A stretch of 63,155 nucleotides of DNA, counting the filler, from Sluysia triapertura (lineage: Eukaryota), in assembly GCA_046118255.1 (NCBI GenBank). It is 5 parts of 5 records of this genome, joined end to end, with 100 filler letters (N's around TTAATTAATTAA, not from the genome) between each part and the next. Parts side by side here need not be neighbours in the genome. Positions count along the whole stretch, not along the records: positions 51,139 to 63,155 come from JBJNIA010147276.1; 4 more parts are not named here. The stretch is one strand, 5' to 3'. Positions 51,139 to 63,155 of the stretch are shown here, piece by piece; position 1 is the stretch's first letter; each line of letters opens with the position of its first letter. The translations under genes and the position numbers were made by a program. The notes beneath the pieces are model-generated. The model was not told the DNA's origin. It saw only the letters and a program-made list of their open reading frames with translations, and did not search any database.

Positions 51139-51254
51139 TGTACTAAACGTTCGTCTCACAACACCGAGATGAATAAACATCTCTTACATTTAATCATTTT
51201 ATGGCCCTCCATAGAGAGGTACTCAATCCATACGTCTATAATAAATAACTGAAA

Positions 51255-52181
51255 TTGATTCACAATTTTTACGCAATTTTAAAACTAATATTACTCAATT
51301 ATTTTGGCTTAATTATTTATCATATTATAATAGATAGAACTCTTCGATTAAAATTAAATTCTGATGTCAAACAAAATGTTATCGAAATTAAGAGTAATTC
51401 TACGTTAAATGAATTGCTTTGTCGCTTAAGAAATAATTTTAATGATGATGAAAAACCAAGCTCAATTATTTTAAGTAGATATCTACCGAATTCAATTGAC
51501 ACTAAAAAGTTAAGCCTTGCTCTTGCTAAAAGCCAATTAATGAATGATGTTTGTATTTTGATCAAATTTAAAGAAGAATGTTACTTATTGATATTTGTAA
51601 AGCATGAAGTTCTTTTTCATAATCTATGTCTGTATATAGGTATTCCTTGTTGCCCTAATGAAGGCCATGTAAATAAATATGATTCTACAGCAGATAGATA
51701 TACAACAGCGAACATAGATGTATCAGTTCCTGATTCTTATAATGCCAACTTACTTGATAGTAAAATTTCAGCAGATTATTCAACACGTATTTATCATTCT
51801 ACATTTAACTACTACTCTTTTAACGCAAACAATGGTATTCTTCCAACAACCATATCAATAATTGGTATTTCTTCAAACCAACGAAAGTATAATGTTTTTC
51901 GAACATCACAATGTCCATTCCAATTGAATGAATTTGGTCAGTGCTGCAGATTTGGACAATCTTGTCAATTTTATCATAATATCCAAGAAATACGTTATAT
52001 TGATGCTAATCACAACGTCATTAATGATCACTTAGAACGTATCAATAATTTAGTAATGACCATTCAAGCTGGTAAAGTCAATGATGAGTTGACATTTAAC
52101 AAAAATCATGTCAATACTCAATCTATCAGCTCCATAGAGGATTTTGATTCAAAAGAATTTACAGTGGCAGAAAGTTATTAA
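51255..52181 (+). CDS. Uncharacterised protein with one C-terminal CCCH zinc finger (C-x9-C-x6-C-x3-H, Unkempt-type); open copy of a multicopy family
   Basis: 308-codon open frame with YNVFRTSQCPFQLNEFGQCCRFGQSCQFYHNIQEIR (finger 51912-51977) and AATAAA ~80 nt after the stop. True start is uncertain: TTG in the track, first ATG at 51540, close to the contig edge. Confidence 0.75.
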   Translation: MIHNFYAILKLILLNYFGLIIYHIIIDRTLRLKLNSDVKQNVIEIKSNSTLNELLCRLRNNFNDDEKPSSIILSRYLPNSIDTKKLSLALAKSQLMNDVCILIKFKEECYLLIFVKHEVLFHNLCLYIGIPCCPNEGHVNKYDSTADRYTTANIDVSVPDSYNANLLDSKISADYSTRIYHSTFNYYSFNANNGILPTTISIIGISSNQRKYNVFRTSQCPFQLNEFGQCCRFGQSCQFYHNIQEIRYIDANHNVINDHLERINNLVMTIQAGKVNDELTFNKNHVNTQSISSIEDFDSKEFTVAESY

Positions 52182-54535
52182 GTGTCCTTATGCGAACAGT
52201 TTATTCAACATCATAAATGACTCTATAACTTTTAATTTTAGCATGATCTTTATTTTCAAAATAAATAAATGTATTTCAATGTTTGACTTATCGGCCATTT
52301 CATTAATATAGTTAAACATACGTAACGAAATTAAATTAAATTTATTTAAAATTTTGAATTATGATAATAAAGTCTTTAAATTAATTGTAATCAATTTTAA
52401 CGCGCTACTTCATATTAAAGATATAGATAAACCATTTCATCATACCATAACTCCAAATTTGGAACTTCGTATAACATATATATCTGAATTTAAATAATTT
52501 AGTAAAATATTCTTTTACGATCTTAACTTCGAACACAAATATTTTTATAATATTGATGTTAAACTACATACGAAAACGGTTTGATTTTTTTGTTATAAAT
52601 CCAAGATGATTCAGTTTAAATAATTGGTGTTTAGTTTTGTAATTGGGTTTCTAATAACACATTGCAGTTCAAATAAAAAACTAATCCAATTAAAACAGTG
52701 TTTTGCACAAAACTTTCACGATTACCCTTCTTTAATCATTAAATTTTTTATCACCTGTAGCTACTTATTTGTTTTACTCAGAGTTTTCAACAATTTATGA
52801 TCTGTATTAAGAGTAACATTTAAATTGTGATATATCGATCTTGAAAAAGTGTCTGTATTTGTGTTTGGAAAATAGTATTTATAAATTCATCACTTTTATT
52901 TAAATCAATATTCGAGCTGCTCTAGGAAAAATCTCCAAGCCTAAAAAAGTGATTATATTATCGTCTTTCATAATTTATACATTGCTTGATTATTGTATGA
53001 TTATCTGTAATTTGTTAGAAGTTCAGTTGTTTAATGTATTTAATTTAAAATATAAGTAGATTAATGTTTAGTTTTAAAAAGAGACAAAACTGCAATTATA
53101 CTCCAATAAATACAATAATAAAAGCAATATTCCTTATTTTATTTTTAGTATTAATATTAATATTTACTTATTAATATTAATATTACTTAATATTCTTATT
53201 GTTTCATTACCTCATGAATAAACTAAAATATAAATTCTTAATTAATAATAATTAGTTGTACAATGTTAATGGTAATCAATGAATTTATGAATTTATTATA
53301 TCTCAAAGCAAAAAAGAATTTTTGATTAGTGAACGCTCATTTTTCACCAGTTTTGAATTACTTAATAATTTATTAAATAATCCGAACACAAAAATCAGTT
53401 GTTACAGCAGTTACACAGCAGTGTTCTACAAATTTTAAAGGATAATCGTCATAATTTACATATCAAAGACATCCATCTGTATGTATATTTATATTTATTA
53501 TTTTAATCTTATTTGTATTGTTAAGTAATGAAAAAACATTTCCAACTTTGGTTATTTGTTCATATTAAAATTGTCATTTTATGTTAAATTAAGAGTTAAA
53601 TGTATTGTAAAAATTCTTAATATTGTTATGATTATATGACTAATAGATTACATTCTGAATAATAGATTATATGACTAATAAATGTTACGATTAATAAATT
53701 TTATGATTAATAAATTTTTATAAACACGATTATGATTAATACAACTTTATATGTGTAATTACGAAATAAGATTAATGCGTTACAACATAAATATTAATAT
53801 ATGTTTATATTCTAAATCAATATTCATATTCTAAAAAATTTTTTTGAATTTAACTGGAAATTATATATTAAATGTAAGATTTTTATTTTAATTATTTTAA
53901 TGCTAATTAAATTTATTTTATGCAATACAAAGCAAAAAATACATACAATCGATCAACATATATATAAAACTTTAGCAAACTTGATTTTAAATAATGATTT
54001 TAATGAACTACTATGAAAAAGTAGCTGTTTTATGTCAAATGTATTTTGTTTATATTTTAGAAAAGCAGTTATAAATACTGCTGTAAACTTAAATATAAAA
54101 AACTAACGATACAAATTGGATAAAACTGATGGTAAAAGATTTTTGTTGGATAATATCTTCGGAAGAACTCCTTCAAATACGAGATGATTTAAAATGCAAA
54201 AGTGTTGTGTGTGTTAAATGACTAACTAAACTACTTATATTGATATGTTAAATGACTAATCAACGGAAATTTGATTCATATTATAATATTGATTTTATTA
54301 TTGTTTTAATGTATATATATTGATTAATTATTATTTTATTATTATAATTGATTTATTGGAAAATTATAATTTTAAAAGTTTAAAAGTATGTTATTATTTT
54401 ATTTTTATTTTTTATTACCTTTAATTATTTTAATAACTTTTAATTTTCTTAATAACTTTTAATATTAACGTGACTATTTTAAAAACATTTATTTTTAAAT
54501 AAAAAAACATTTTAAAAATATTTTTAAAGTATTTT

Positions 54536-55464
54536 GTTTTAATCTGATCTTTCAAGGTCAGATTAAAACCACTATAAAAACAATCTAATGTTCATAATTT
54601 TCACAATTTTTTAAAGTAAAAGATTTTATAATTTGTTGTTTAGTGAAGCTGCTAAATTCAAAGGATCAGTCACGCTAGATTAATTAATTTTAAGATAAGA
54701 TATTATTATAATATCATTTGAAATATTTCCACTTAAACTTATTTAATAAATCTGGACCATATAAAGGTCTGTTGTGAAATTATTTTTATAAATTTTTAAA
54801 CTTTATAACTAGTTCTATCTAGTTCTTGTAAAATTTCTATTTCTTTTTAACCTATTGTATATTATTGTTAGTTAATAAATTATTTATTGTCCATATTGTT
54901 TTTTGTAATTTTAATATAAAATCAGTAAAAATATGAAGAAGCTTTCATACACTAGAATTTAATTCTAGTAGGTAAAATCTTTTTAACTGATCCCATATAA
55001 CGGGATTTACGCAAAATCATTTTAAATATCTACATTTAATATTTAAATTAAATTAATTCAAATTCTTATTAAACTCCAGATTTAAGGTACTAGGTAAGAT
55101 CAACACTTTAATAGTTAAATATCTATTTTCGATTTAAATCCAACGGCTGGCCCTCGCTTGTAAGTCCAGTATGTTGGTGAACTCACATTAAAATTTAAAC
55201 TCTTTATTCTATACACTTTTTCATATGGCATTCTCACAAAAGGATTTTCACTAAGGAAAATATATTAATGATTGCTTAAGTTTACAAATGCTCTAAAGTT
55301 AAGGTCTGTTGGTATTTAGTTGTTTTTCAAATTTATAAGGGCAATTCACAGTAATCAAGATCTGGAGGTATTTTAGTTACAGCACTGAAAACCCTTTGTA
55401 ATTTTAATTATAACAGTGAAATTCGTTTATAAATTATTTTACTGAAATCCTATTAAAAGGATTT
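54536..55464. repeat. Cluster of short inverted repeats
   Basis: GTTTTAATCTGA..TCAGATTAAAAC (54536-54569), GACC-ATATAAA-GGTC (54755), ACTAGAATT-T-AATTCTAGT (54951), ATCCC-ATATAAC-GGGAT (54990), AAATCCT-ATTAAA-AGGATTT (55445). Confidence 0.7.
55136..55189 (-). repeat. Dispersed repeat end (TGTGAG...CCAAC hairpin), copy 2
   Basis: Homologous to 26186-26240. Confidence 0.85.
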
Positions 55465-56268
55465 GTGTTTGAGATAGATGATTTTACTTTGTCAAAATTA
55501 TACTTTAACTGAAACTTTACTTATAATGATAAATTTACGAATTTAAAACTATGAAAATTAATATCTATTCAATAATAATAAAGACTTTCTTCTTAAACGT
55601 ATATTTATTAAATAAATTACAACAGAAATAGAATCGATAATAAATTTATAAATTTTTCATTAATTAACTATTAGTTAATTAATTTTTAGGCAAATCAGTT
55701 TAAAAACGGATTTTGTGTGAAACTGGTAAACGTTTCAAAGTATTTTACTAAATGTATTTTAAGTATATTTTACGAAGATACTGTTTTAGTACCGAACCTT
55801 AAAATTATATAAACTAACGTTACAAAAGAATTTATTAAAAGCCAAGATTGACTAAAGTTAATCTGAAGTAATATACAACGGGGTTCAAGTGTATCCCGAA
55901 CACTTGTTAAAAACTTGTGAAATCTAAATTTTGTATTTGTCTATTGTGTAAAAATTGTTTGTGTGATAATGTAAAAATTTAAGGCTTTTTATACTTATTT
56001 TAGGTCGACCTTGGCTTTCAAATATTAAATTTAAGCAATTTAAATATTAAATAAATATTAAATTAAATATTTGAATTGAATAATGCTTACCTTTACAAAT
56101 TAAATTAATTAAATTCCAAAATTGTTAACTTCGAAAATTAAAATAAAATAAAAACCAATACTAAAAATCAACAATACTAATTGTAATCAATTAATATTCA
56201 CATAAATGTATGTTTATACAATGTTCAATTAATATGCATAAATTATGTCACTATGTCACAATGTTACT

Positions 56269-57140
56269 TTACAATTGTAATGAATCAACTAAGTTGCACA
56301 TACGATCTATTTCACCATTAAAATTGGTAATGTGATGCAAATAATCACTAAGCTCTCATACATTATGGGCATATGGACAATGTTGGCCATATTTGAGACA
56401 TAACCCTGATTCTGATATATCATACATACATTTTGCTGCTTTATAATAGTTAAAGTCATGAGCATCTTTAAAATACTTTGTTGTCATCATGTTAGATTAA
56501 AATTCATTACAGTGAACTATAGGTTCTATTTCTTTAAAACGTTATTCACGTTTGACGTAACTCTTGAACAATCCTTTATAAATACTTTCTTTATCATCAC
56601 ATTTTTTAATATTAAATATATGCATTAAATCAGAAAAGTAGTGATGTTCGTTGTACAAATAAGACTTGATTTTATACGATATTTTGTTATCTGCCAAATT
56701 GATCATATTGTCTTCGTAATGATTATAATCGTTAATCTTTACAAACGAAGTTAGTGTAATTTCATAAAATATGGTCTAAACGGGTTAATTACTAGATTTT
56801 CTTCATTTCTCAGAGAAACCATATTATAAATTGTGCCAGTCAATTCGTGCGCATCAAATAACTGAAACAATGAAGACAATGAATACTTAGATGTTGAAAT
56901 AGATTATATCAGATTTAATAATATCATAGTAGTTGATTTGTATTTTCTGGAGAGATTTTTTTCTGATATATTTGTCTTGATTAACAAATCAATAAGTTTA
57001 TTTATAGCAGTATCATTAGGATATTTAGAGCAGGAATCGAATTTTTGTAAATTTCGAATTTCATTTAAATCATTTGAATTTAATGATTCATTTCTGGTTC
57101 TTTTATCTACTTGACATTTACTTAGATATTTATTAATTCA
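56269..57140 (-). pseudogene. Decayed member of the single-CCCH (Unkempt-type finger) family
   Basis: Intact finger YYKAAKCMYDISESGLCLKYGQHCPYAH (Cys 56430 to His 56365), then NV*ELS...FNGEIDRMCNLVDSLQL*. Upstream NLADNKIS and SISTSKYSL match NLLDSKIS and SIDTKKLSL of ORF 51255. Contains stops and frameshifts. Confidence 0.8.
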
Positions 57141-57856
57141 AGGAATTTTCTTTTAAATAAATTTTCATAAAAATTTTTGTCTGTGCTCAAGCAACAAGAT
57201 TTTTAATTTATGTTTTCAGTTTTGTTTAATAATTGAGGTATAGACACTAACTAAAACAATCTATTGATATTCGATGTTAAGAATTTTTCCTTTTTTAATT
57301 AACTAACAACTTGTATATTATTTGTTGATTTTTTAATGAATCAAATTGCTTGTTTTTATTTATAGGTAAACACAATTATGTACAACGCAACAAGTAATCA
57401 CAACTTTTTCTTTATAATTTCAGTTAGTCAACTGTCACTCGTTTACAGAAATTGGAACACAGATGATGGAAAACTGTCAAGGATGACAGTTGCTGAGAGC
57501 GGAATTCGAAATAATTAATAGTGGTGATACTAATAATTTTGTAGTAATGATAATAATAATAAGTAAAATAGAATAAATAATAATAATACGATAAAATGAA
57601 AAATAGCAATAAAATAAAATTAATAATAAAAGTAATAAAAATGAATAAAATACATAAAAATTCTTCTTAATAACTTTCTTTTTCTTTAATATATAAAATA
57701 TGAAAATAATACATAAAATACATAAATTCTTCTTTAACCCTTTAACCGCCGGTAAGCGCATTTTTGCGAACACATTTATTTGAGAGATTGTATGAAATAC
57801 ATGTGAGAAAAGCCATTAAAGAACTGGTGCCACTTGCGTTAGTGTTAATTTCAAAA

Positions 57857-58596
57857 TTAATTAAAAATGTATAATTTTTCATGAATTTTCAATTGTGTGG
57901 AGGGATTTTTGAACTTTGATTTTAATAAATTATGATTACTTTTATTTATTTTGGAGTTTAAAAATTTAACTAAATTAAAACATTTTAACTTTAATTTAGA
58001 AACCCTTAACAAACCAGGCTTAAGGCCTGCAAAAATTAACATTTTTAAAACAAAAACAAAGTTCAACATTTTATTAATGCAACATGTTTTAGCAACACAA
58101 CAATTATTTATAAAAACATTAAATTCAATGAATTCAAATAAATCTACACCTGTCACTTTGTAGTACAAATATTCTGCTAATTTTGGAAATAAATCTTTTA
58201 CATAAGTATGATAATTATCATTAATGTTTATGGTGTATATTTTTATTTGTGCAGCAGTAACAAATAGGCATAATGTAAAAATGATTGTAACAATTAAATT
58301 TCTACTAATAAATGCAACGAAACCAAACAATAAATTTAACGCTATACTAATTGTTAATATTAATGAATTATAATATTGTCGTTGATAATAAAATACATCG
58401 ACTTTAAAATCCTTTGTAGCACTGATAAGTTATATCCTGTTGATATAATTTCAAGCTGTAACATTTTTAAAAAACGCTTATACGCAATTTTACCAAACGA
58501 AAACGTATAACAATTATGTAATCCGAATATATAAACAAAACACATTGCGCAAACCCGTTTGGATAATAATAATGCATAAGTAGTCAAAAATTCCAT
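57857..58596 (-). pseudogene. Frameshifted membrane-protein gene, tetraspanin-like
   Basis: Two ORFs join by a frameshift near 58430. Hydrophobic N-terminus, then SLILTISIALNLLFGFVAFISRNLIVTIIFTLCLFVTAAQI (TM2-short loop-TM3 pattern) and a loop containing CCVAKTCC. The canonical CCG is not retained. Confidence 0.4.
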
Positions 58597-58899
58597 TTCT
58601 CCATTTTGCAGTTTTCAATCACAAAAATGTTTGCTTTTGATGAGCCTATTTTCACACCTTACATAAGACATACAAAAGTAAGACCATAATTATTGATTTT
58701 TTTTAAATTTAGTAATATTTATTTTAGTGAGTACCATAAATAAATTACATTACAATCATTTAATATTAATCAAAATTAAACAATAAAAATAAAATTCATT
58801 AAAAATTAATAAAAATTAATTAATAAAATTCAATAAAAATTATAATTATGATTTCCATTAAAAATTCGGTAAATAATTACCAGAATAAAATTTATTTAA

Positions 58900-59525
58900 T
58901 TATTTGGAATAATCTTGTACAATCGGTAATGGTACATTTGCATCTTTGGCGTATTCATTAAATGTTCTGTCTGATGAAAACTTACAGATGAAGCAACAAT
59001 ATAAATCATCATTTTTGCTCATGTCTCGATTTTTATAGGTATTATTAACCATTTCTTGAGTTCGTAAATAATCTCCAAAATCAGCACAAATCATAAAACG
59101 ATCATGATAATATATTGAATTATATATATATCAGCGAATAAACCAGGATTTTCAGGATTTGTTCTAATATTGTCATTAATTCTGGACAGTTATGTATCAA
59201 TGATTTCGCATCATACCCTTTTCTTCCAAGTTCTGTAACATCTCTTTCAAGCATTCCAAATATAAACATATTCTCTCTACCTCATTCTTCACACATTTCC
59301 ATATTTGCTCCATTCATAGTTCCTATTGTCAAAGCACCATCTAACATAAATTTCATATTTCCAGTTCCTGACGCTTCAGTACCAGCTGTTGATATTTGTT
59401 GCTATAGTTCACTAGCTGGAAATATCTTTTCTGCTGATGATACTCGATAATTTTCCAAGAAAAAATAATTGAATTGTCACTCCTTGAAGCCGATGAAGTA
59501 ACAATTTAATGAGTTTCTTGCATAT
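58900..59525 (-). pseudogene. Glycogen phosphorylase C-terminal fragment, decayed
   Basis: [66 protein letters not shown] contains the PLP-lysine motif [10 protein letters not shown]; also DRFMICADFGDYL and KFSSDRTFNEYAKD. Stops and frameshifts; no introns seen. Confidence 0.95.
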
Positions 59526-59910
59526 TTTAGGTGAGAATTACAGAATCCATCCAGGTCCACAACATGCTGATTTCTTTAATCGACATTAATATCAATTGTT
59601 TATTTAAACAGCTTCAAACATGTATAAAAATAATTTATTGATTAATACATAAATATATGTATACATAAACTGGAAGAAAAAAAGAATAAAGAGAAAGGTT
59701 AATAATAAGGATAAAAAATAATAATGATAAAAACAACGTAATTATTACATAATTTAGAATAATGATGCTGATGATGTTAATATGAAATTTATTATAAAAG
59801 TTATTATTTGATAGTCATATTATACAACAATAATGACAATAATTATTATATATTTTAATACGATTGGGGTTATAATAACAATAACTGTGATAAATATGTA
59901 CAATGGTTAT

Positions 59911-60012
59911 GTTTGTTTTTTGAATGAGTTTAGTAGTTTGTTTAATGATCTGTGTATATGTGAAATGTTTTTATGTGATGAAGTGTGATGAATTTTATGA
60001 GATTTCCCTACA
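59911..60012 (-). repeat. Second copy of the TGTAG-initiated ~100 bp repeat
   Basis: Reverse complement matches 42789-42890. Confidence 0.9.
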
Positions 60013-60929
60013 CTGTCATAAATATTTTCACAGTTATAACTATCGTAAATTTCAAAATGATTTAATGATTTTACTCACGTAGCCTGTAGTCCATAACAAA
60101 TTCTTTAATCAATGACTTTTTATAACTATAAATGAGAAAAGATTTCGTGAAATATTTGTCACTATAAGTAAAAATTAAAGAAAATAAACGGTTCAAAAAA
60201 AGGATTTTTTTGATCAGAATTATTTAGTAATGAAGATTAATACAGTTTTACTTCATTTTACTTAATCATAATTTGTAATTTGTAATGCTTAATTTGTAAT
60301 TATTGGAATTAAAGCATAAATATAAGTAAACATAGAATTTAAAATATAAGTACAACATAGAATTTAAATTAAAAATTAATTTTTAAACAAACTAAATAAT
60401 GCATAAGTAAAATATTAGATGTAAATATTAAAAATAAGAAATACAATATATCAAATAATGATTTAGTGTATGTATGTTTCATTTTTTTCGTACTGCTTTA
60501 TTTTTTATTATTATTTTTCTTTGTTATTTGTTTCTTCATTACCAAAAATAAAAAACATAAATTTGAGTACAGGTATATTATGAATATGTGATAAATAATA
60601 ATATACAAATATTATAAATAATAATAATAGCAATAATAATGATGATGTTAAATAAGTAATGTTATTTAAATTACTTAATATTTACTGCTATTATTATTAA
60701 TATTAATGTGCTAATGACTGAATCCAAAGGTTACATTTTTATTTAAACCAACATTAATTAAGTGAAAAATTAATGTTTGAGTATTATATTAAATTCAGAT
60801 TTGGTGTTAATTTGGAAAAGGATATTTTAGTTTTTGATTTATATAATTTTTGAATTTGTACGGGTCTATTTTGATAATCAGTTAATCACAAAAGCGAGTA
60901 GTGTATCACTACAACATCTGCTAGGATTT

Positions 60930-61080
60930 GCTATCACTTAATCTGCCAACGAATAATTTTTCTAGCATTTCCATAATTAATATCTAACATCTCTGAAGTA
61001 GTTAAGTTGTCTGTGAAAGCAAGTCTAATAAGGTTTTTTCTTTTAGCATTTGATATGTTTCTGCAAATGTCTCTGACTGT
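60930..61080 (-). mobile_element. Tc1/IS630-like transposase N-terminal HTH fragment
   Basis: RNISNAKRKNLIRLAFTDNLTTSEMLDINYGNARKII resembles ISxxxRxxII...LxINYxTVRxII. Confidence 0.4.
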
Positions 61081-61284
61081 TTAAAATATAAATAGTATTA
61101 CTTGTGAGAATTGAAAAATAAAAAACATACTATTTGTTGTAAACAGCTCTAATGTTATAATAAAATTTATAAACACACAATGTATTAAATTATAAATGAT
61201 GTTTAATTCAAATATAATGGATACTTTGGAATTTAAAGTTACTATTGATATTATTAATATATTACATAATAAAATTATTAAATG

Positions 61285-61711
61285 TAAGGTGACCAGACGT
61301 CCCGCTTTTGGCGGAACAGTCCCGATTTTTCACAATTTTTCCCGTGTCCCGCGAAGTTTTTCAAAAGTCTTGACTTTTAGAATTAAGTTCAATTTTATAT
61401 TTATGAAAATCATTGTTTTGCGCTCTAAGAAACCTACGGGCAACGACGACTAACATATTGCTTTTGCTACCAAGTTACATTGTATTTGTCTTTCAGATGA
61501 TACACTTCGTGTTCGTACTGCGTGCTAGCAAGCTAATTAAACAAATAAATATTACAAATCTACTACTTATCATAGAAAATTAAGTTAAGTCTTATGTTAA
61601 AAATAAAAAAATATTACGATATTATTTTTATTCTGCATGAAAATTTTTGTTGATACTTCACTCTCCTTCAGAGTTGCCCCGCTTTGCCCATCTAAAAATC
61701 TGGTCAGCTTA
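61285..61711. mobile_element. Complete non-autonomous hAT element (MITE), 427 bp
   Basis: TIRs TAAGGTGACCAGA / TCTGGTCAGCTTA (12/13 match), perfect 8-bp TSD ATTAAATG (61277-61284 and 61712-61719), and subterminal GTCCCG repeats. Confidence 0.93.
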
Positions 61712-63084
61712 ATTAAATGATATTATTAATAATATTATCAAATGATGTCAATTGTAAATAAGGAAATATTAATATTATCATTATCGTAAAGCAGCTTATG
61801 ATTGATTTTATAAGACTTCATGGAGGATTCATCGAAAATTCAATGCCATGTTGTAGTTCTTTCTTGATTGGAATTTTTATATAAGAAAATCAACAAAATG
61901 TTCGAAAGTGATCGTCAATTTTATTATAGAAACTTCAGTTCGTCTTTTCATTAAACTTGACCCTCTTTGGATGATTTTTTTTGCTCGGTACATAAATAGT
62001 TTCATAAATAGTAACTTTTTCACTTATCTCACTTTTCCATCATTTATAATCTTTTTAATATATTATTTTTCTTTATATCATTTAATTTATCATATTTTAC
62101 AAACAATTTTCAATATAATAATAATTTAGATTTTGTTCTTGTAATTACTTAATCTATGTAAGCTTGTGCTTTATGATGTTTATGATAAATTTAAATTATT
62201 TTCCAATTAAAATCATATTTGAAGTGGTCTTTCAATAATATCTTTTATGTAACAAAATGCGTAAGTGCTAAAGAAATGTTTTTTATTAGAATTTTCAAAA
62301 AATTAGATATTGTAAAATGTATATTTAATTAAGTTTTCGTACTTCACATTACAAAGTTTTAATTTTAAAGCTAAATAAATTTTCTACTCATTTTTTTGAC
62401 TGCAATTTTTAATATTAAAAAATATTTAATAAATTTTCATTAATAAAGTATCATTATTTTATATAATATTAAATCGTCTTTGAAAAATTGCTTGGAAAAC
62501 ATTTTGATCAAACTATAAAGTTTATTATTAAAAAGAAGAAACAATTTTAAATGTGGAAATTTTAATTCAATAAACAGAAATTATGAAAAAAAAACTATTT
62601 TAAACCTCCTAAACTACTCACAATTGCATCAACACTTTGTTCTCAAAGCAGCGGAAGTTCATTGTTAAAAGTCTGAAGTTTAAATAAAATTTAACATCTT
62701 ATTTTTGTTTATAACATATAAAATTAGTGAATTCTTTAATTATGTTAGCTTTTCATTTTGCTATTTTTCCTAATTTTTAATAGCGCATACAAAGATTGTC
62801 TGTGGGGGAGAATTAAAATTTCTTAAAACTGTTATCCTACAATAATTTCATTTTTATACTTTGGTAAATATCATTGTAATTGATTTAGATATATCAATTA
62901 AACCTTAACAATTTTCTCTATATTTCGTTCAAATTTTAACTTTAAACGTCTAAATTTTTATTTTAGAAAAAAGCAAATTCTTTAAATTTTATTTACTGAT
63001 TATTAAAACAAATATTGAAAGCATTTATTCATAAAAATAATCAAGCTGAATGATAAAACAAAAAATAAAGTAATAAAACCAAAT

Positions 63085-63086
<2 letters not shown>

Positions 63087-63155
<69 letters not shown>
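63087..63155. repeat. (AAT)n microsatellite
   Basis: Perfect AAT run to the window end. Confidence 0.95.

What the first reader, a model, noticed from the sequence alone, without database searches (positions are those of the whole stretch)
51255..52181. Apparently undescribed high-copy family: unknown N-terminal region plus one Unkempt-type CCCH finger
Seen: the fingers CPFQLNEFGQCCRFGQSCQFYH (51912), CMYDISESGLCLKYGQHCPYAH (56430) and (H)PTSTNNKGVCLRYGMFCRYAH (14532) share C-x9-C-x6-C-x3-H spacing. Copies also share upstream motifs (L..LP..I, NL...IG.P, NL.D.KIS) and a post-finger helix (N.HLERINNLV / N.EIDRMCNLV / N.HSQRII). At least 4 and perhaps 6 copies occur in 63 kb over three unlinked contigs; they lack apparent introns, are very divergent and are mostly dead. 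Established: this spacing and the YYK..C lead-in match, from memory, finger 3 of the RNA-binding protein Unkempt, which normally has six fingers; CCCH fingers bind RNA. Inference: a large birth-and-death expansion, either a selfish element carrying an RNA-binding protein or a lineage-specific RNA-regulatory or defence family.
Basis: partly seen in the sequence, partly recalled or inferred. Interest (0 to 1): 0.85.

Follow-up and report, generated by a model that had tools for sequence, protein, structure and literature searches.

The report
Orphan single CCCH-finger gene and dead paralogue
A very AT-rich, probably animal, DNA piece carries one intact reading frame and one recently broken relative, each encoding a protein with a single Unkempt-type RNA-binding zinc finger behind a long region that matches nothing known; this is a modest lineage-specific gene pair, and the claimed high copy number could not be tested.

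Summary
They are the only CCCH patterns in all six frames of the piece, against 0.045 expected by chance.

- **ORF1 (51249-52181, +):** 310 codons are open, against at most 154 in simulations, and it shows coding-type GC periodicity.
- **Copy 2 (56269-57137, -):** about 289 codons with the same layout, broken by four internal stops and at least one frameshift. It still has far fewer stops than neutral DNA here (P about 1e-4), so it died recently.
- **Unkempt link:** copy 2's finger passes Pfam's UNK-like CCCH model (45 bits, cut-off 31.1). Its best solved-structure match is finger 3 of mouse Unkempt, with the same C-x9-C-x6-C-x3-H spacing. ORF1's finger is weaker (24 bits) and its spacing is ambiguous.
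- **Other shared motifs:** the upstream motifs are not significant (z -0.17). The post-finger helix is marginal (43 of 2000 shuffles).
- **Relatives:** nothing in 1.84 billion representative proteins, Pfam, PDB or the ESM Atlas matches the N-terminal 200 residues.
- **Mobility:** no transposon marks were found.

Only two copies could be checked, so "high-copy" is untested. Most likely this is a fast-evolving host gene family that gains and loses copies.

The parts
51249..52181 (+). ORF1: 310-codon open frame (ORF listing gives 51255-52181, 308 aa from a TTG) ending in TAA. There is no in-frame ATG before 51540 (codon 96), so the start codon probably lies in an upstream exon or has been lost. 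An in-frame TAA sits at 51252, and the piece's edge is only 110 nt further upstream.
   Evidence: Its length compares with at most 134-154 codons in 300 Markov simulations, and GC at codon positions 1/2/3 is 36/29/20%. The atlas recognition score is 3056, which is protein-like.
51339..51599 (+). Predicted alpha/beta N-terminal region of ORF1 (strand-strand-helix-strand-helix-strand-strand). The model is low-confidence and the fold is unidentified.
   Evidence: Single-sequence AlphaFold2 gave pLDDT 53 and pTM 0.42. Foldseek against PDB found nothing at E<=0.001, the atlas gave TM<0.5, and VIA-align's best Z was 4.5.
51912..51977 (+). CCCH zinc finger of ORF1 (residues 220-241). All four ligands are present, and aromatic residues sit at TIS11-like positions.
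   Evidence: PF25427 E 3.7e-5, 24 bits, below the 31.1 cut-off. PDB hits are TIS11-type fingers at E 0.009-0.07. Pattern scan.
52011..52070 (+). Predicted post-finger helix of ORF1, weakly similar to the stretch after copy 2's finger (shared motif R-x-x-NLV-x-x-x-Q).
   Evidence: Helix in the AF2 model. Shuffle test z 2.5, 43 of 2000. Included in the tblastn HSP.
56269..57137 (-). Copy 2: a recently decayed paralogue of about 289 codons with the same layout as ORF1. In-frame stops lie at 56904-56906, 56542-56544 and 56497-56499 (all TAA) and at 56356-56358 (TGA, inside the conserved post-finger stretch). A frameshift lies between about 56754 and 56775. The terminal TAA is at 56269-56271.
   Evidence: Stops are far rarer than in neutral DNA here (0.09 per codon): P 8e-5 for the first 128 codons and 1e-4 for the last 168.
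56365..56430 (-). CCCH finger of copy 2, C-x9-C-x6-C-x3-H with a YYK lead-in; Unkempt finger-3 type.
   Evidence: PF25427 E 1e-11, 45 bits, above the 31.1 cut-off. 5ELH finger 3 scores 22.4 bits, against 9.5 for finger 2; 5ELK (fingers 4-6) reaches only E 6.6.

Best explanation
ORF1 and copy 2 are two old, highly diverged members of a lineage-specific host gene family. They lie tail to tail, about 4 kb apart, in a gene-poor, pseudogene-rich, roughly 23% GC region of what is probably an animal genome.

Each encodes, or encoded, a protein of about 290-310 residues. The layout is an N-terminal region of about 200 residues with no known relatives, then one Unkempt finger-3-type CCCH zinc finger, then a short helix. 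ORF1 is still open and was under purifying selection until very recently or still is. Copy 2 was a working gene that died recently.

Inferred mechanism: the finger binds a few bases of single-stranded, probably U/A-rich, RNA. The N-terminal domain or the helix would supply self-association or an effector contact, because a lone CCCH finger binds weakly. The finger itself was probably inherited from an unkempt-like ancestor by partial duplication.

Shown: the frames, the fingers, the domain-level homology and the decay state. Inferred: RNA binding, function, family size and origin.
For: - ORF length and codon-position GC periodicity.
- Only two CCCH patterns in the piece, against 0.045 expected.
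- The finger-plus-tail regions align between the copies.
- Both copies have the same overall length and finger position, and copy 2 is strongly depleted in stops relative to neutral DNA.
- Pfam UNK-like CCCH hits and the Unkempt finger-3 match in 5ELH.
- CCCH clusters of Unkempt specify RNA motifs: UAG plus a U/A-rich trimer (PMC11009413).
- No LTR or TIR, no transposon domains, and no DNA similarity between the copies or their flanks.
- No viral relatives.
Against: - N-terminal similarity between the two copies is not significant, so homology is demonstrated only for about 66 residues.
- ORF1's finger is below Pfam's curated cut-off.
- No orthologue or other family member was found in any database, so selection and family size are untested.
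Confidence: 0.55

Rival explanations
1. The whole family is dead. ORF1 is itself a very young pseudogene that lost its start codon, or a stranded exon, and has simply not yet acquired stops. The locus would be a graveyard of retrocopies of one expressed parent gene located elsewhere.
For: - There is no ATG before codon 96, and an in-frame TAA lies at 51252.
- The neighbours are dead genes: copy 2, and an intronless, 5'-truncated glycogen phosphorylase pseudogene.
- Both copies appear intronless.
Against: - 310 open codons at a neutral stop frequency of 0.09 per codon is very unlikely unless inactivation was extremely recent.
- The two copies are too diverged (no DNA similarity) yet too stop-poor to be neutral retrocopies of one parent. 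Each must have evolved as a coding sequence for most of its history.
Confidence: 0.17
2. The two loci are independent partial duplicates of the unkempt gene's finger-3 exon embedded in unrelated sequence. They would not be a family with a shared N-terminal domain.
For: - Only the finger and, marginally, the helix align.
- Copy 2's finger is strikingly close to Unkempt finger 3.
Against: - Both frames have the same length and the same finger position near the C-terminus.
- There is a collinear, though non-significant, NL.D.KIS match upstream.
- The two share a post-finger motif that is not seen in the Unkempt alignment.
- No trace of Unkempt's other fingers or RING was found.
Confidence: 0.13
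3. The protein is carried by a selfish element, as a transposon accessory or Gag-like RNA-binding protein or as an endogenised viral gene, which would explain many scattered dead copies.
For:
- The piece holds a MITE-like element and a retro-pseudogene, so mobile activity exists in this genome.
Against: - No LTRs, TIRs or target-site duplications surround either copy.
- No RT, integrase, transposase or Gag domains occur in any frame of 45 codons or more in 52138-54102 or 55118-57888; the one such frame overlapping 54496-54535 was deliberately left unscanned.
- The flanks share no DNA similarity.
- No relatives were found in 2.9 million viral contigs.
- Retroelement nucleic-acid-binding proteins use CCHC knuckles, not CCCH fingers (my own knowledge).
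Confidence: 0.1

Closest known systems
Unkempt (UNK/UNKL), zinc finger 3 (PDB 5ELH; Pfam PF25427 zf-CCCH_UNK)
   Same: Same unusual 22-residue C-x9-C-x6-C-x3-H span. Copy 2 also has the YYK lead-in and the G-x-C-x-K-x-G-x-H-C-x-x-A-H pattern. Presumably the same zinc-dependent single-stranded RNA contact.
   Different: Unkempt has six fingers in two compact clusters plus a C-terminal RING. These proteins have one finger, no RING, and an unrelated N-terminal region of about 200 residues. ORF1's own finger is below the Pfam cut-off.
TIS11/ZFP36 (tristetraprolin, TIS11d) tandem CCCH fingers
   Same: ORF1's finger aligns best to these among solved structures (E 0.009-0.07). It keeps the aromatic positions: a lead-in F/Y, C-x-F, K/R-F/Y-G and C-x-F-x-H.
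   Different: TIS11 proteins have two C-x8-C-x5-C-x3-H fingers 18 residues apart. Here there is one finger with a longer span. All eight hits of the exhaustive search were multi-finger proteins of this kind, matched through the finger only.
Regnase-1/ZC3H12-type layout (a globular domain followed by a single CCCH finger)
   Same: The general plan: one N-terminal globular domain, then one CCCH finger, then a C-terminal tail. This suggests how a lone finger can work as a targeting add-on to another domain (my own knowledge).
   Different: No NYN/PIN RNase domain was detected at E<=10 in Pfam, and no structural match was found. The resemblance is of architecture only.

Membership tests
Unkempt orthologue (UNK/UNKL) | Six CCCH fingers in two clusters of three | tested here: not met
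   There is one CCCH pattern per copy, two in the whole piece, and one PF25427 stretch per protein.
Unkempt orthologue (UNK/UNKL) | C-terminal RING finger | tested here: not met
   No RING family appears among the Pfam hits at E<=10 for ORF1. ORF1 ends 67 residues after the finger.
Pfam PF25427 zf-CCCH_UNK (domain level) | Score at or above the gathering cut-off of 31.1 bits | tested here: met
   The copy 2 finger piece scores 45.0 bits, E 1e-11. Its best PDB match is Unkempt finger 3.
Pfam PF25427 zf-CCCH_UNK (domain level) | The same cut-off applied to ORF1's finger | tested here: inconclusive
   24.0 bits, E 3.7e-5, below the cut-off. The spacing is ambiguous because of a CC pair, and 5ELH is not among ORF1's PDB hits.
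TIS11/ZFP36 family | Tandem pair of C-x8-C-x5-C-x3-H fingers with a (R/K)YKTELC lead-in | tested here: not met
   There is a single finger with a 22-residue span. The alignments to 1RGO and 1M9O cover one finger only.
Retroelement Gag/ORF1 or other transposon protein | CCHC knuckle or known Gag/ORF1 domain, an adjacent RT, integrase or transposase, and terminal repeats | tested here: not met
   Pfam finds none in ORF1, in the copy 2 pieces, or in the flanking frames of 45 codons or more that were scanned (52138-54102 and 55118-57888; the frame overlapping 54496-54535 was skipped). No LTR or TIR was found.
Regnase/ZC3H12 | NYN/PIN RNase domain directly before the single CCCH finger | tested here: not met
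   There is no such Pfam hit at E<=10 and no structural match for the N-terminal model. The model is of low confidence.
The proposed new family itself | A conserved N-terminal region shared by the copies | tested here: inconclusive
   The shuffle test gives z -0.17. There is one collinear weak hit at E 0.32. Length and finger position are shared.
The proposed new family itself | Many copies genome-wide | not testable with these tools
   The source genome is in none of the searchable collections. Only this 12-kb piece may be read.

The most novel reading that the evidence does not exclude
A large, fast-evolving family of single-finger RNA-binding proteins that gains and loses copies. It would be built from an Unkempt finger-3 module fused to a new N-terminal fold, and would act in an RNA-level conflict such as transposon or virus RNA recognition or germline mRNA control. 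This would be an RNA-side analogue of the KRAB zinc-finger arms race.
Probability: 0.12. Interest if true: 0.65.

Novelty: new variant of a known kind. Interest (0 to 1): 0.3.

Why it matters
If the family is large and alive, it would be a fresh example of a single RNA-binding module taken from a conserved developmental regulator (Unkempt) and then diversifying quickly in one lineage. It would also supply an N-terminal domain with no known relatives. As it stands, the evidence shows one open and one dead copy of an orphan CCCH gene. That is useful for annotating this genome but not surprising in itself.

Tried and rejected
- **Homologue searches.** The word-indexed search of 5.8 billion proteins was blank for ORF1 and for a profile of ORF1 plus the copy 2 pieces. 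Exhaustive phmmer against 1.84 billion representatives gave only generic multi-finger CCCH proteins. The ESM Atlas search by features was blank.
- **Contig collections.** IMG/VR and JGI metagenome scans were blank.
- Local scripts on the whole piece did include them: the ORF, stop and pattern statistics and the tblastn against the piece itself.
- **Structure.** Single-sequence AlphaFold2 gave pLDDT 32 for the whole protein and 53 for the N-terminal 116 residues. Foldseek against PDB, the atlas and VIA-align wide gave nothing trustworthy. A ubiquitin-like reading of the strand/helix order was considered and dropped for lack of any match.
- **Alternative genetic code.** Rejected. The in-frame TAG and TGA codons of the phosphorylase pseudogene fall at unrelated residues.
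- **Short first exon.** A first exon starting at the ATG at 51201 with a donor at 51219 was considered. It is out of frame with both candidate acceptors (51333 and 51337), so it was not adopted.
- **Other blanks.** Rfam and tRNA scans were blank. Literature searches for this spacing, or for a described family of this kind, found nothing relevant.

Full report
**Scope.** Only places 51139-63155 were read. The piece has about 23% GC (19-29% in 1-kb windows) and contains no N.

**The observation.**
- The ORF listing gives one long frame, 51255-52181 (+), of 308 aa. Measured stop to stop, 310 codons are open.
- A scan of all six frames for C-x6-11-C-x4-7-C-x3-H finds exactly two hits: 51912-51977 (+) inside that frame, and 56365-56430 (-). 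Shuffled sequence gives 0.045.
- ORF1 is not a chance frame. In 300 second-order Markov simulations of 12 kb the longest frame was 134 codons, or 154 with ORF1's own composition. GC at codon positions 1/2/3 is 36/29/20%, against 21% in the flank.
- The atlas 'recognition' value of 3056 is in the range of real proteins.

**Copy 2.**
- On the minus strand, 57137 to 56269 can be read as about 289 codons.
- They are interrupted by TAA at 56904-56906, 56542-56544 and 56497-56499, by TGA at 56356-56358, and by a frameshift near 56754-56775.
- Outside the three coding-like regions, a stop occurs every 11 codons here. Seeing at most 1 stop in the first 128 codons has P about 8e-5. Seeing at most 3 in the last 168 has P about 1e-4.
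- Copy 2 is therefore a recently inactivated coding sequence, not random DNA. Its length and finger position (finger at about codon 237 of 289, against 220 of 308 in ORF1) mirror ORF1.
- The TGA falls inside the stretch that aligns with ORF1, so it is a genuine nonsense change.

**How alike are the two copies?**
- tblastn aligns only the finger and the 30 residues after it: 29% identity over 66 residues, E 2.5e-7 in this small search space. The finger alone gives 31%, E 3e-8.
- The N-terminal parts do not score above shuffles (z -0.17).
- The post-finger helix is marginal (z 2.5; 43 of 2000 shuffles reach it).
- One hint remains. The best hit of copy 2's middle piece anywhere in the piece, though not significant (E 0.32), lands collinearly on ORF1's NL.D.KIS stretch.
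- There is no DNA-level similarity between the copies or their flanks.
- Homology is thus shown for the C-terminal third. For the rest, only the shared architecture suggests it.

**The finger.**
- Copy 2's finger scores 45 bits (E 1e-11) on Pfam PF25427, 'UNK-like CCCH zinc finger', above the 31.1-bit cut-off.
- Against solved structures its best match is mouse Unkempt fingers 1-3 (5ELH). The alignment falls on finger 3, with identical C-x9-C-x6-C-x3-H spacing and the YYK lead-in. Finger 2 scores much lower, and fingers 4-6 (5ELK) reach only E 6.6.
- ORF1's finger is more derived. It scores 24 bits on PF25427, below the cut-off. Its best solved-structure matches are TIS11-type fingers. Its CC pair allows either x9/x6 or x10/x5 spacing.
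- Unkempt's CCCH clusters specify its RNA motif, UAG plus a U/A-rich trimer (PMC11009413). RNA binding by these single fingers is an inference from that.

**What it is not.**
- *Canonical Unkempt:* one finger and no RING.
- *A TIS11 protein:* no tandem pair of fingers.
- *A recognisable mobile element:* no LTR or TIR around either copy. No transposon or viral domain appears in the copy 2 pieces or in the flanking frames of 45 codons or more that were scanned, 52138-54102 and 55118-57888. No relative was found in IMG/VR.

**Relatives.**
- The word-indexed search, the exhaustive phmmer over 1.84 billion representatives and a profile including the copy 2 pieces found no protein resembling the N-terminal 200 residues.
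- The eight phmmer hits are 392-847-aa multi-finger proteins matched through the finger only.
- The source genome is not in the gene-position collection. Only one coded DNA run holds the stretch, and no RNA run does. Copy number, expression and orthology could therefore not be examined.

**Structure.**
- Without an alignment, AlphaFold2 gives pLDDT 32 for the whole protein and 53 for residues 27-142.
- The N-terminal model has a strand-strand-helix-strand-helix-strand-strand order.
- No fold search gave a credible match. The N-terminal fold is unknown, but it has not been shown to be new.

**Gene model.**
- ORF1 has no in-frame ATG before 51540.
- The sequence just upstream of 51333-51337 looks like an intron 3' end: a CTAAT, a T-rich tract and an AG.
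- Copy 2 also lacks a 5' ATG.
- A short upstream exon, possibly beyond the piece's left edge, is the simplest reading. This is inference only.

**Context.** The neighbours are an intronless, 5'-truncated, frameshifted glycogen phosphorylase pseudogene of animal type, a MITE-like element, and long stretches with no recognisable content. This is a gene-poor region in which dead genes persist.

**Verdict.**
- The pair is real: one open and one recently dead member of an orphan single-CCCH gene family. The finger descends from the Unkempt finger-3 type.
- It is most likely a fast-evolving host family (0.55).
- 'High-copy', 'selfish' and 'defence' remain untested.
- Interest is moderate to low until a genome-wide count and expression data exist.

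Noticed in passing
window 58903-59600 (-): Intronless, 5'-truncated glycogen phosphorylase pseudogene covering roughly the last 235 residues. It has in-frame TAG and TGA stops and at least two frameshifts. Its closest solved relatives are vertebrate muscle and liver enzymes, which suggests the host is an animal and that retrocopies decay here.
   Followed up: partly
window 61285-61711: MITE-like element of about 427 bp with a 13-nt terminal inverted repeat (TAAGGTGACCAGA / TCTGGTCAGCTTA). Its interior is more GC-rich than the flanks. The 85-aa ATG ORF at 61196-61453 runs through it and has no Pfam hit.
   Followed up: partly
window 57860-58614 (-): A 190-codon open frame with an 84-codon frame upstream of it; the two overlap across 58363-58429 in different reading frames. 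It is hydrophobic and longer than any simulated ORF, but has no Pfam, homologue or atlas match and a low atlas recognition score (1404). It may be another decayed orphan gene.
   Followed up: partly
window 63085-63155: An (AAT)n microsatellite runs to the right edge of the piece. AT-rich low-complexity tracts are frequent throughout (for example 57535-57660 and 60588-60651).
   Followed up: no
Nothing further was done with them, and they were kept out of all later database searches.
   Followed up: no
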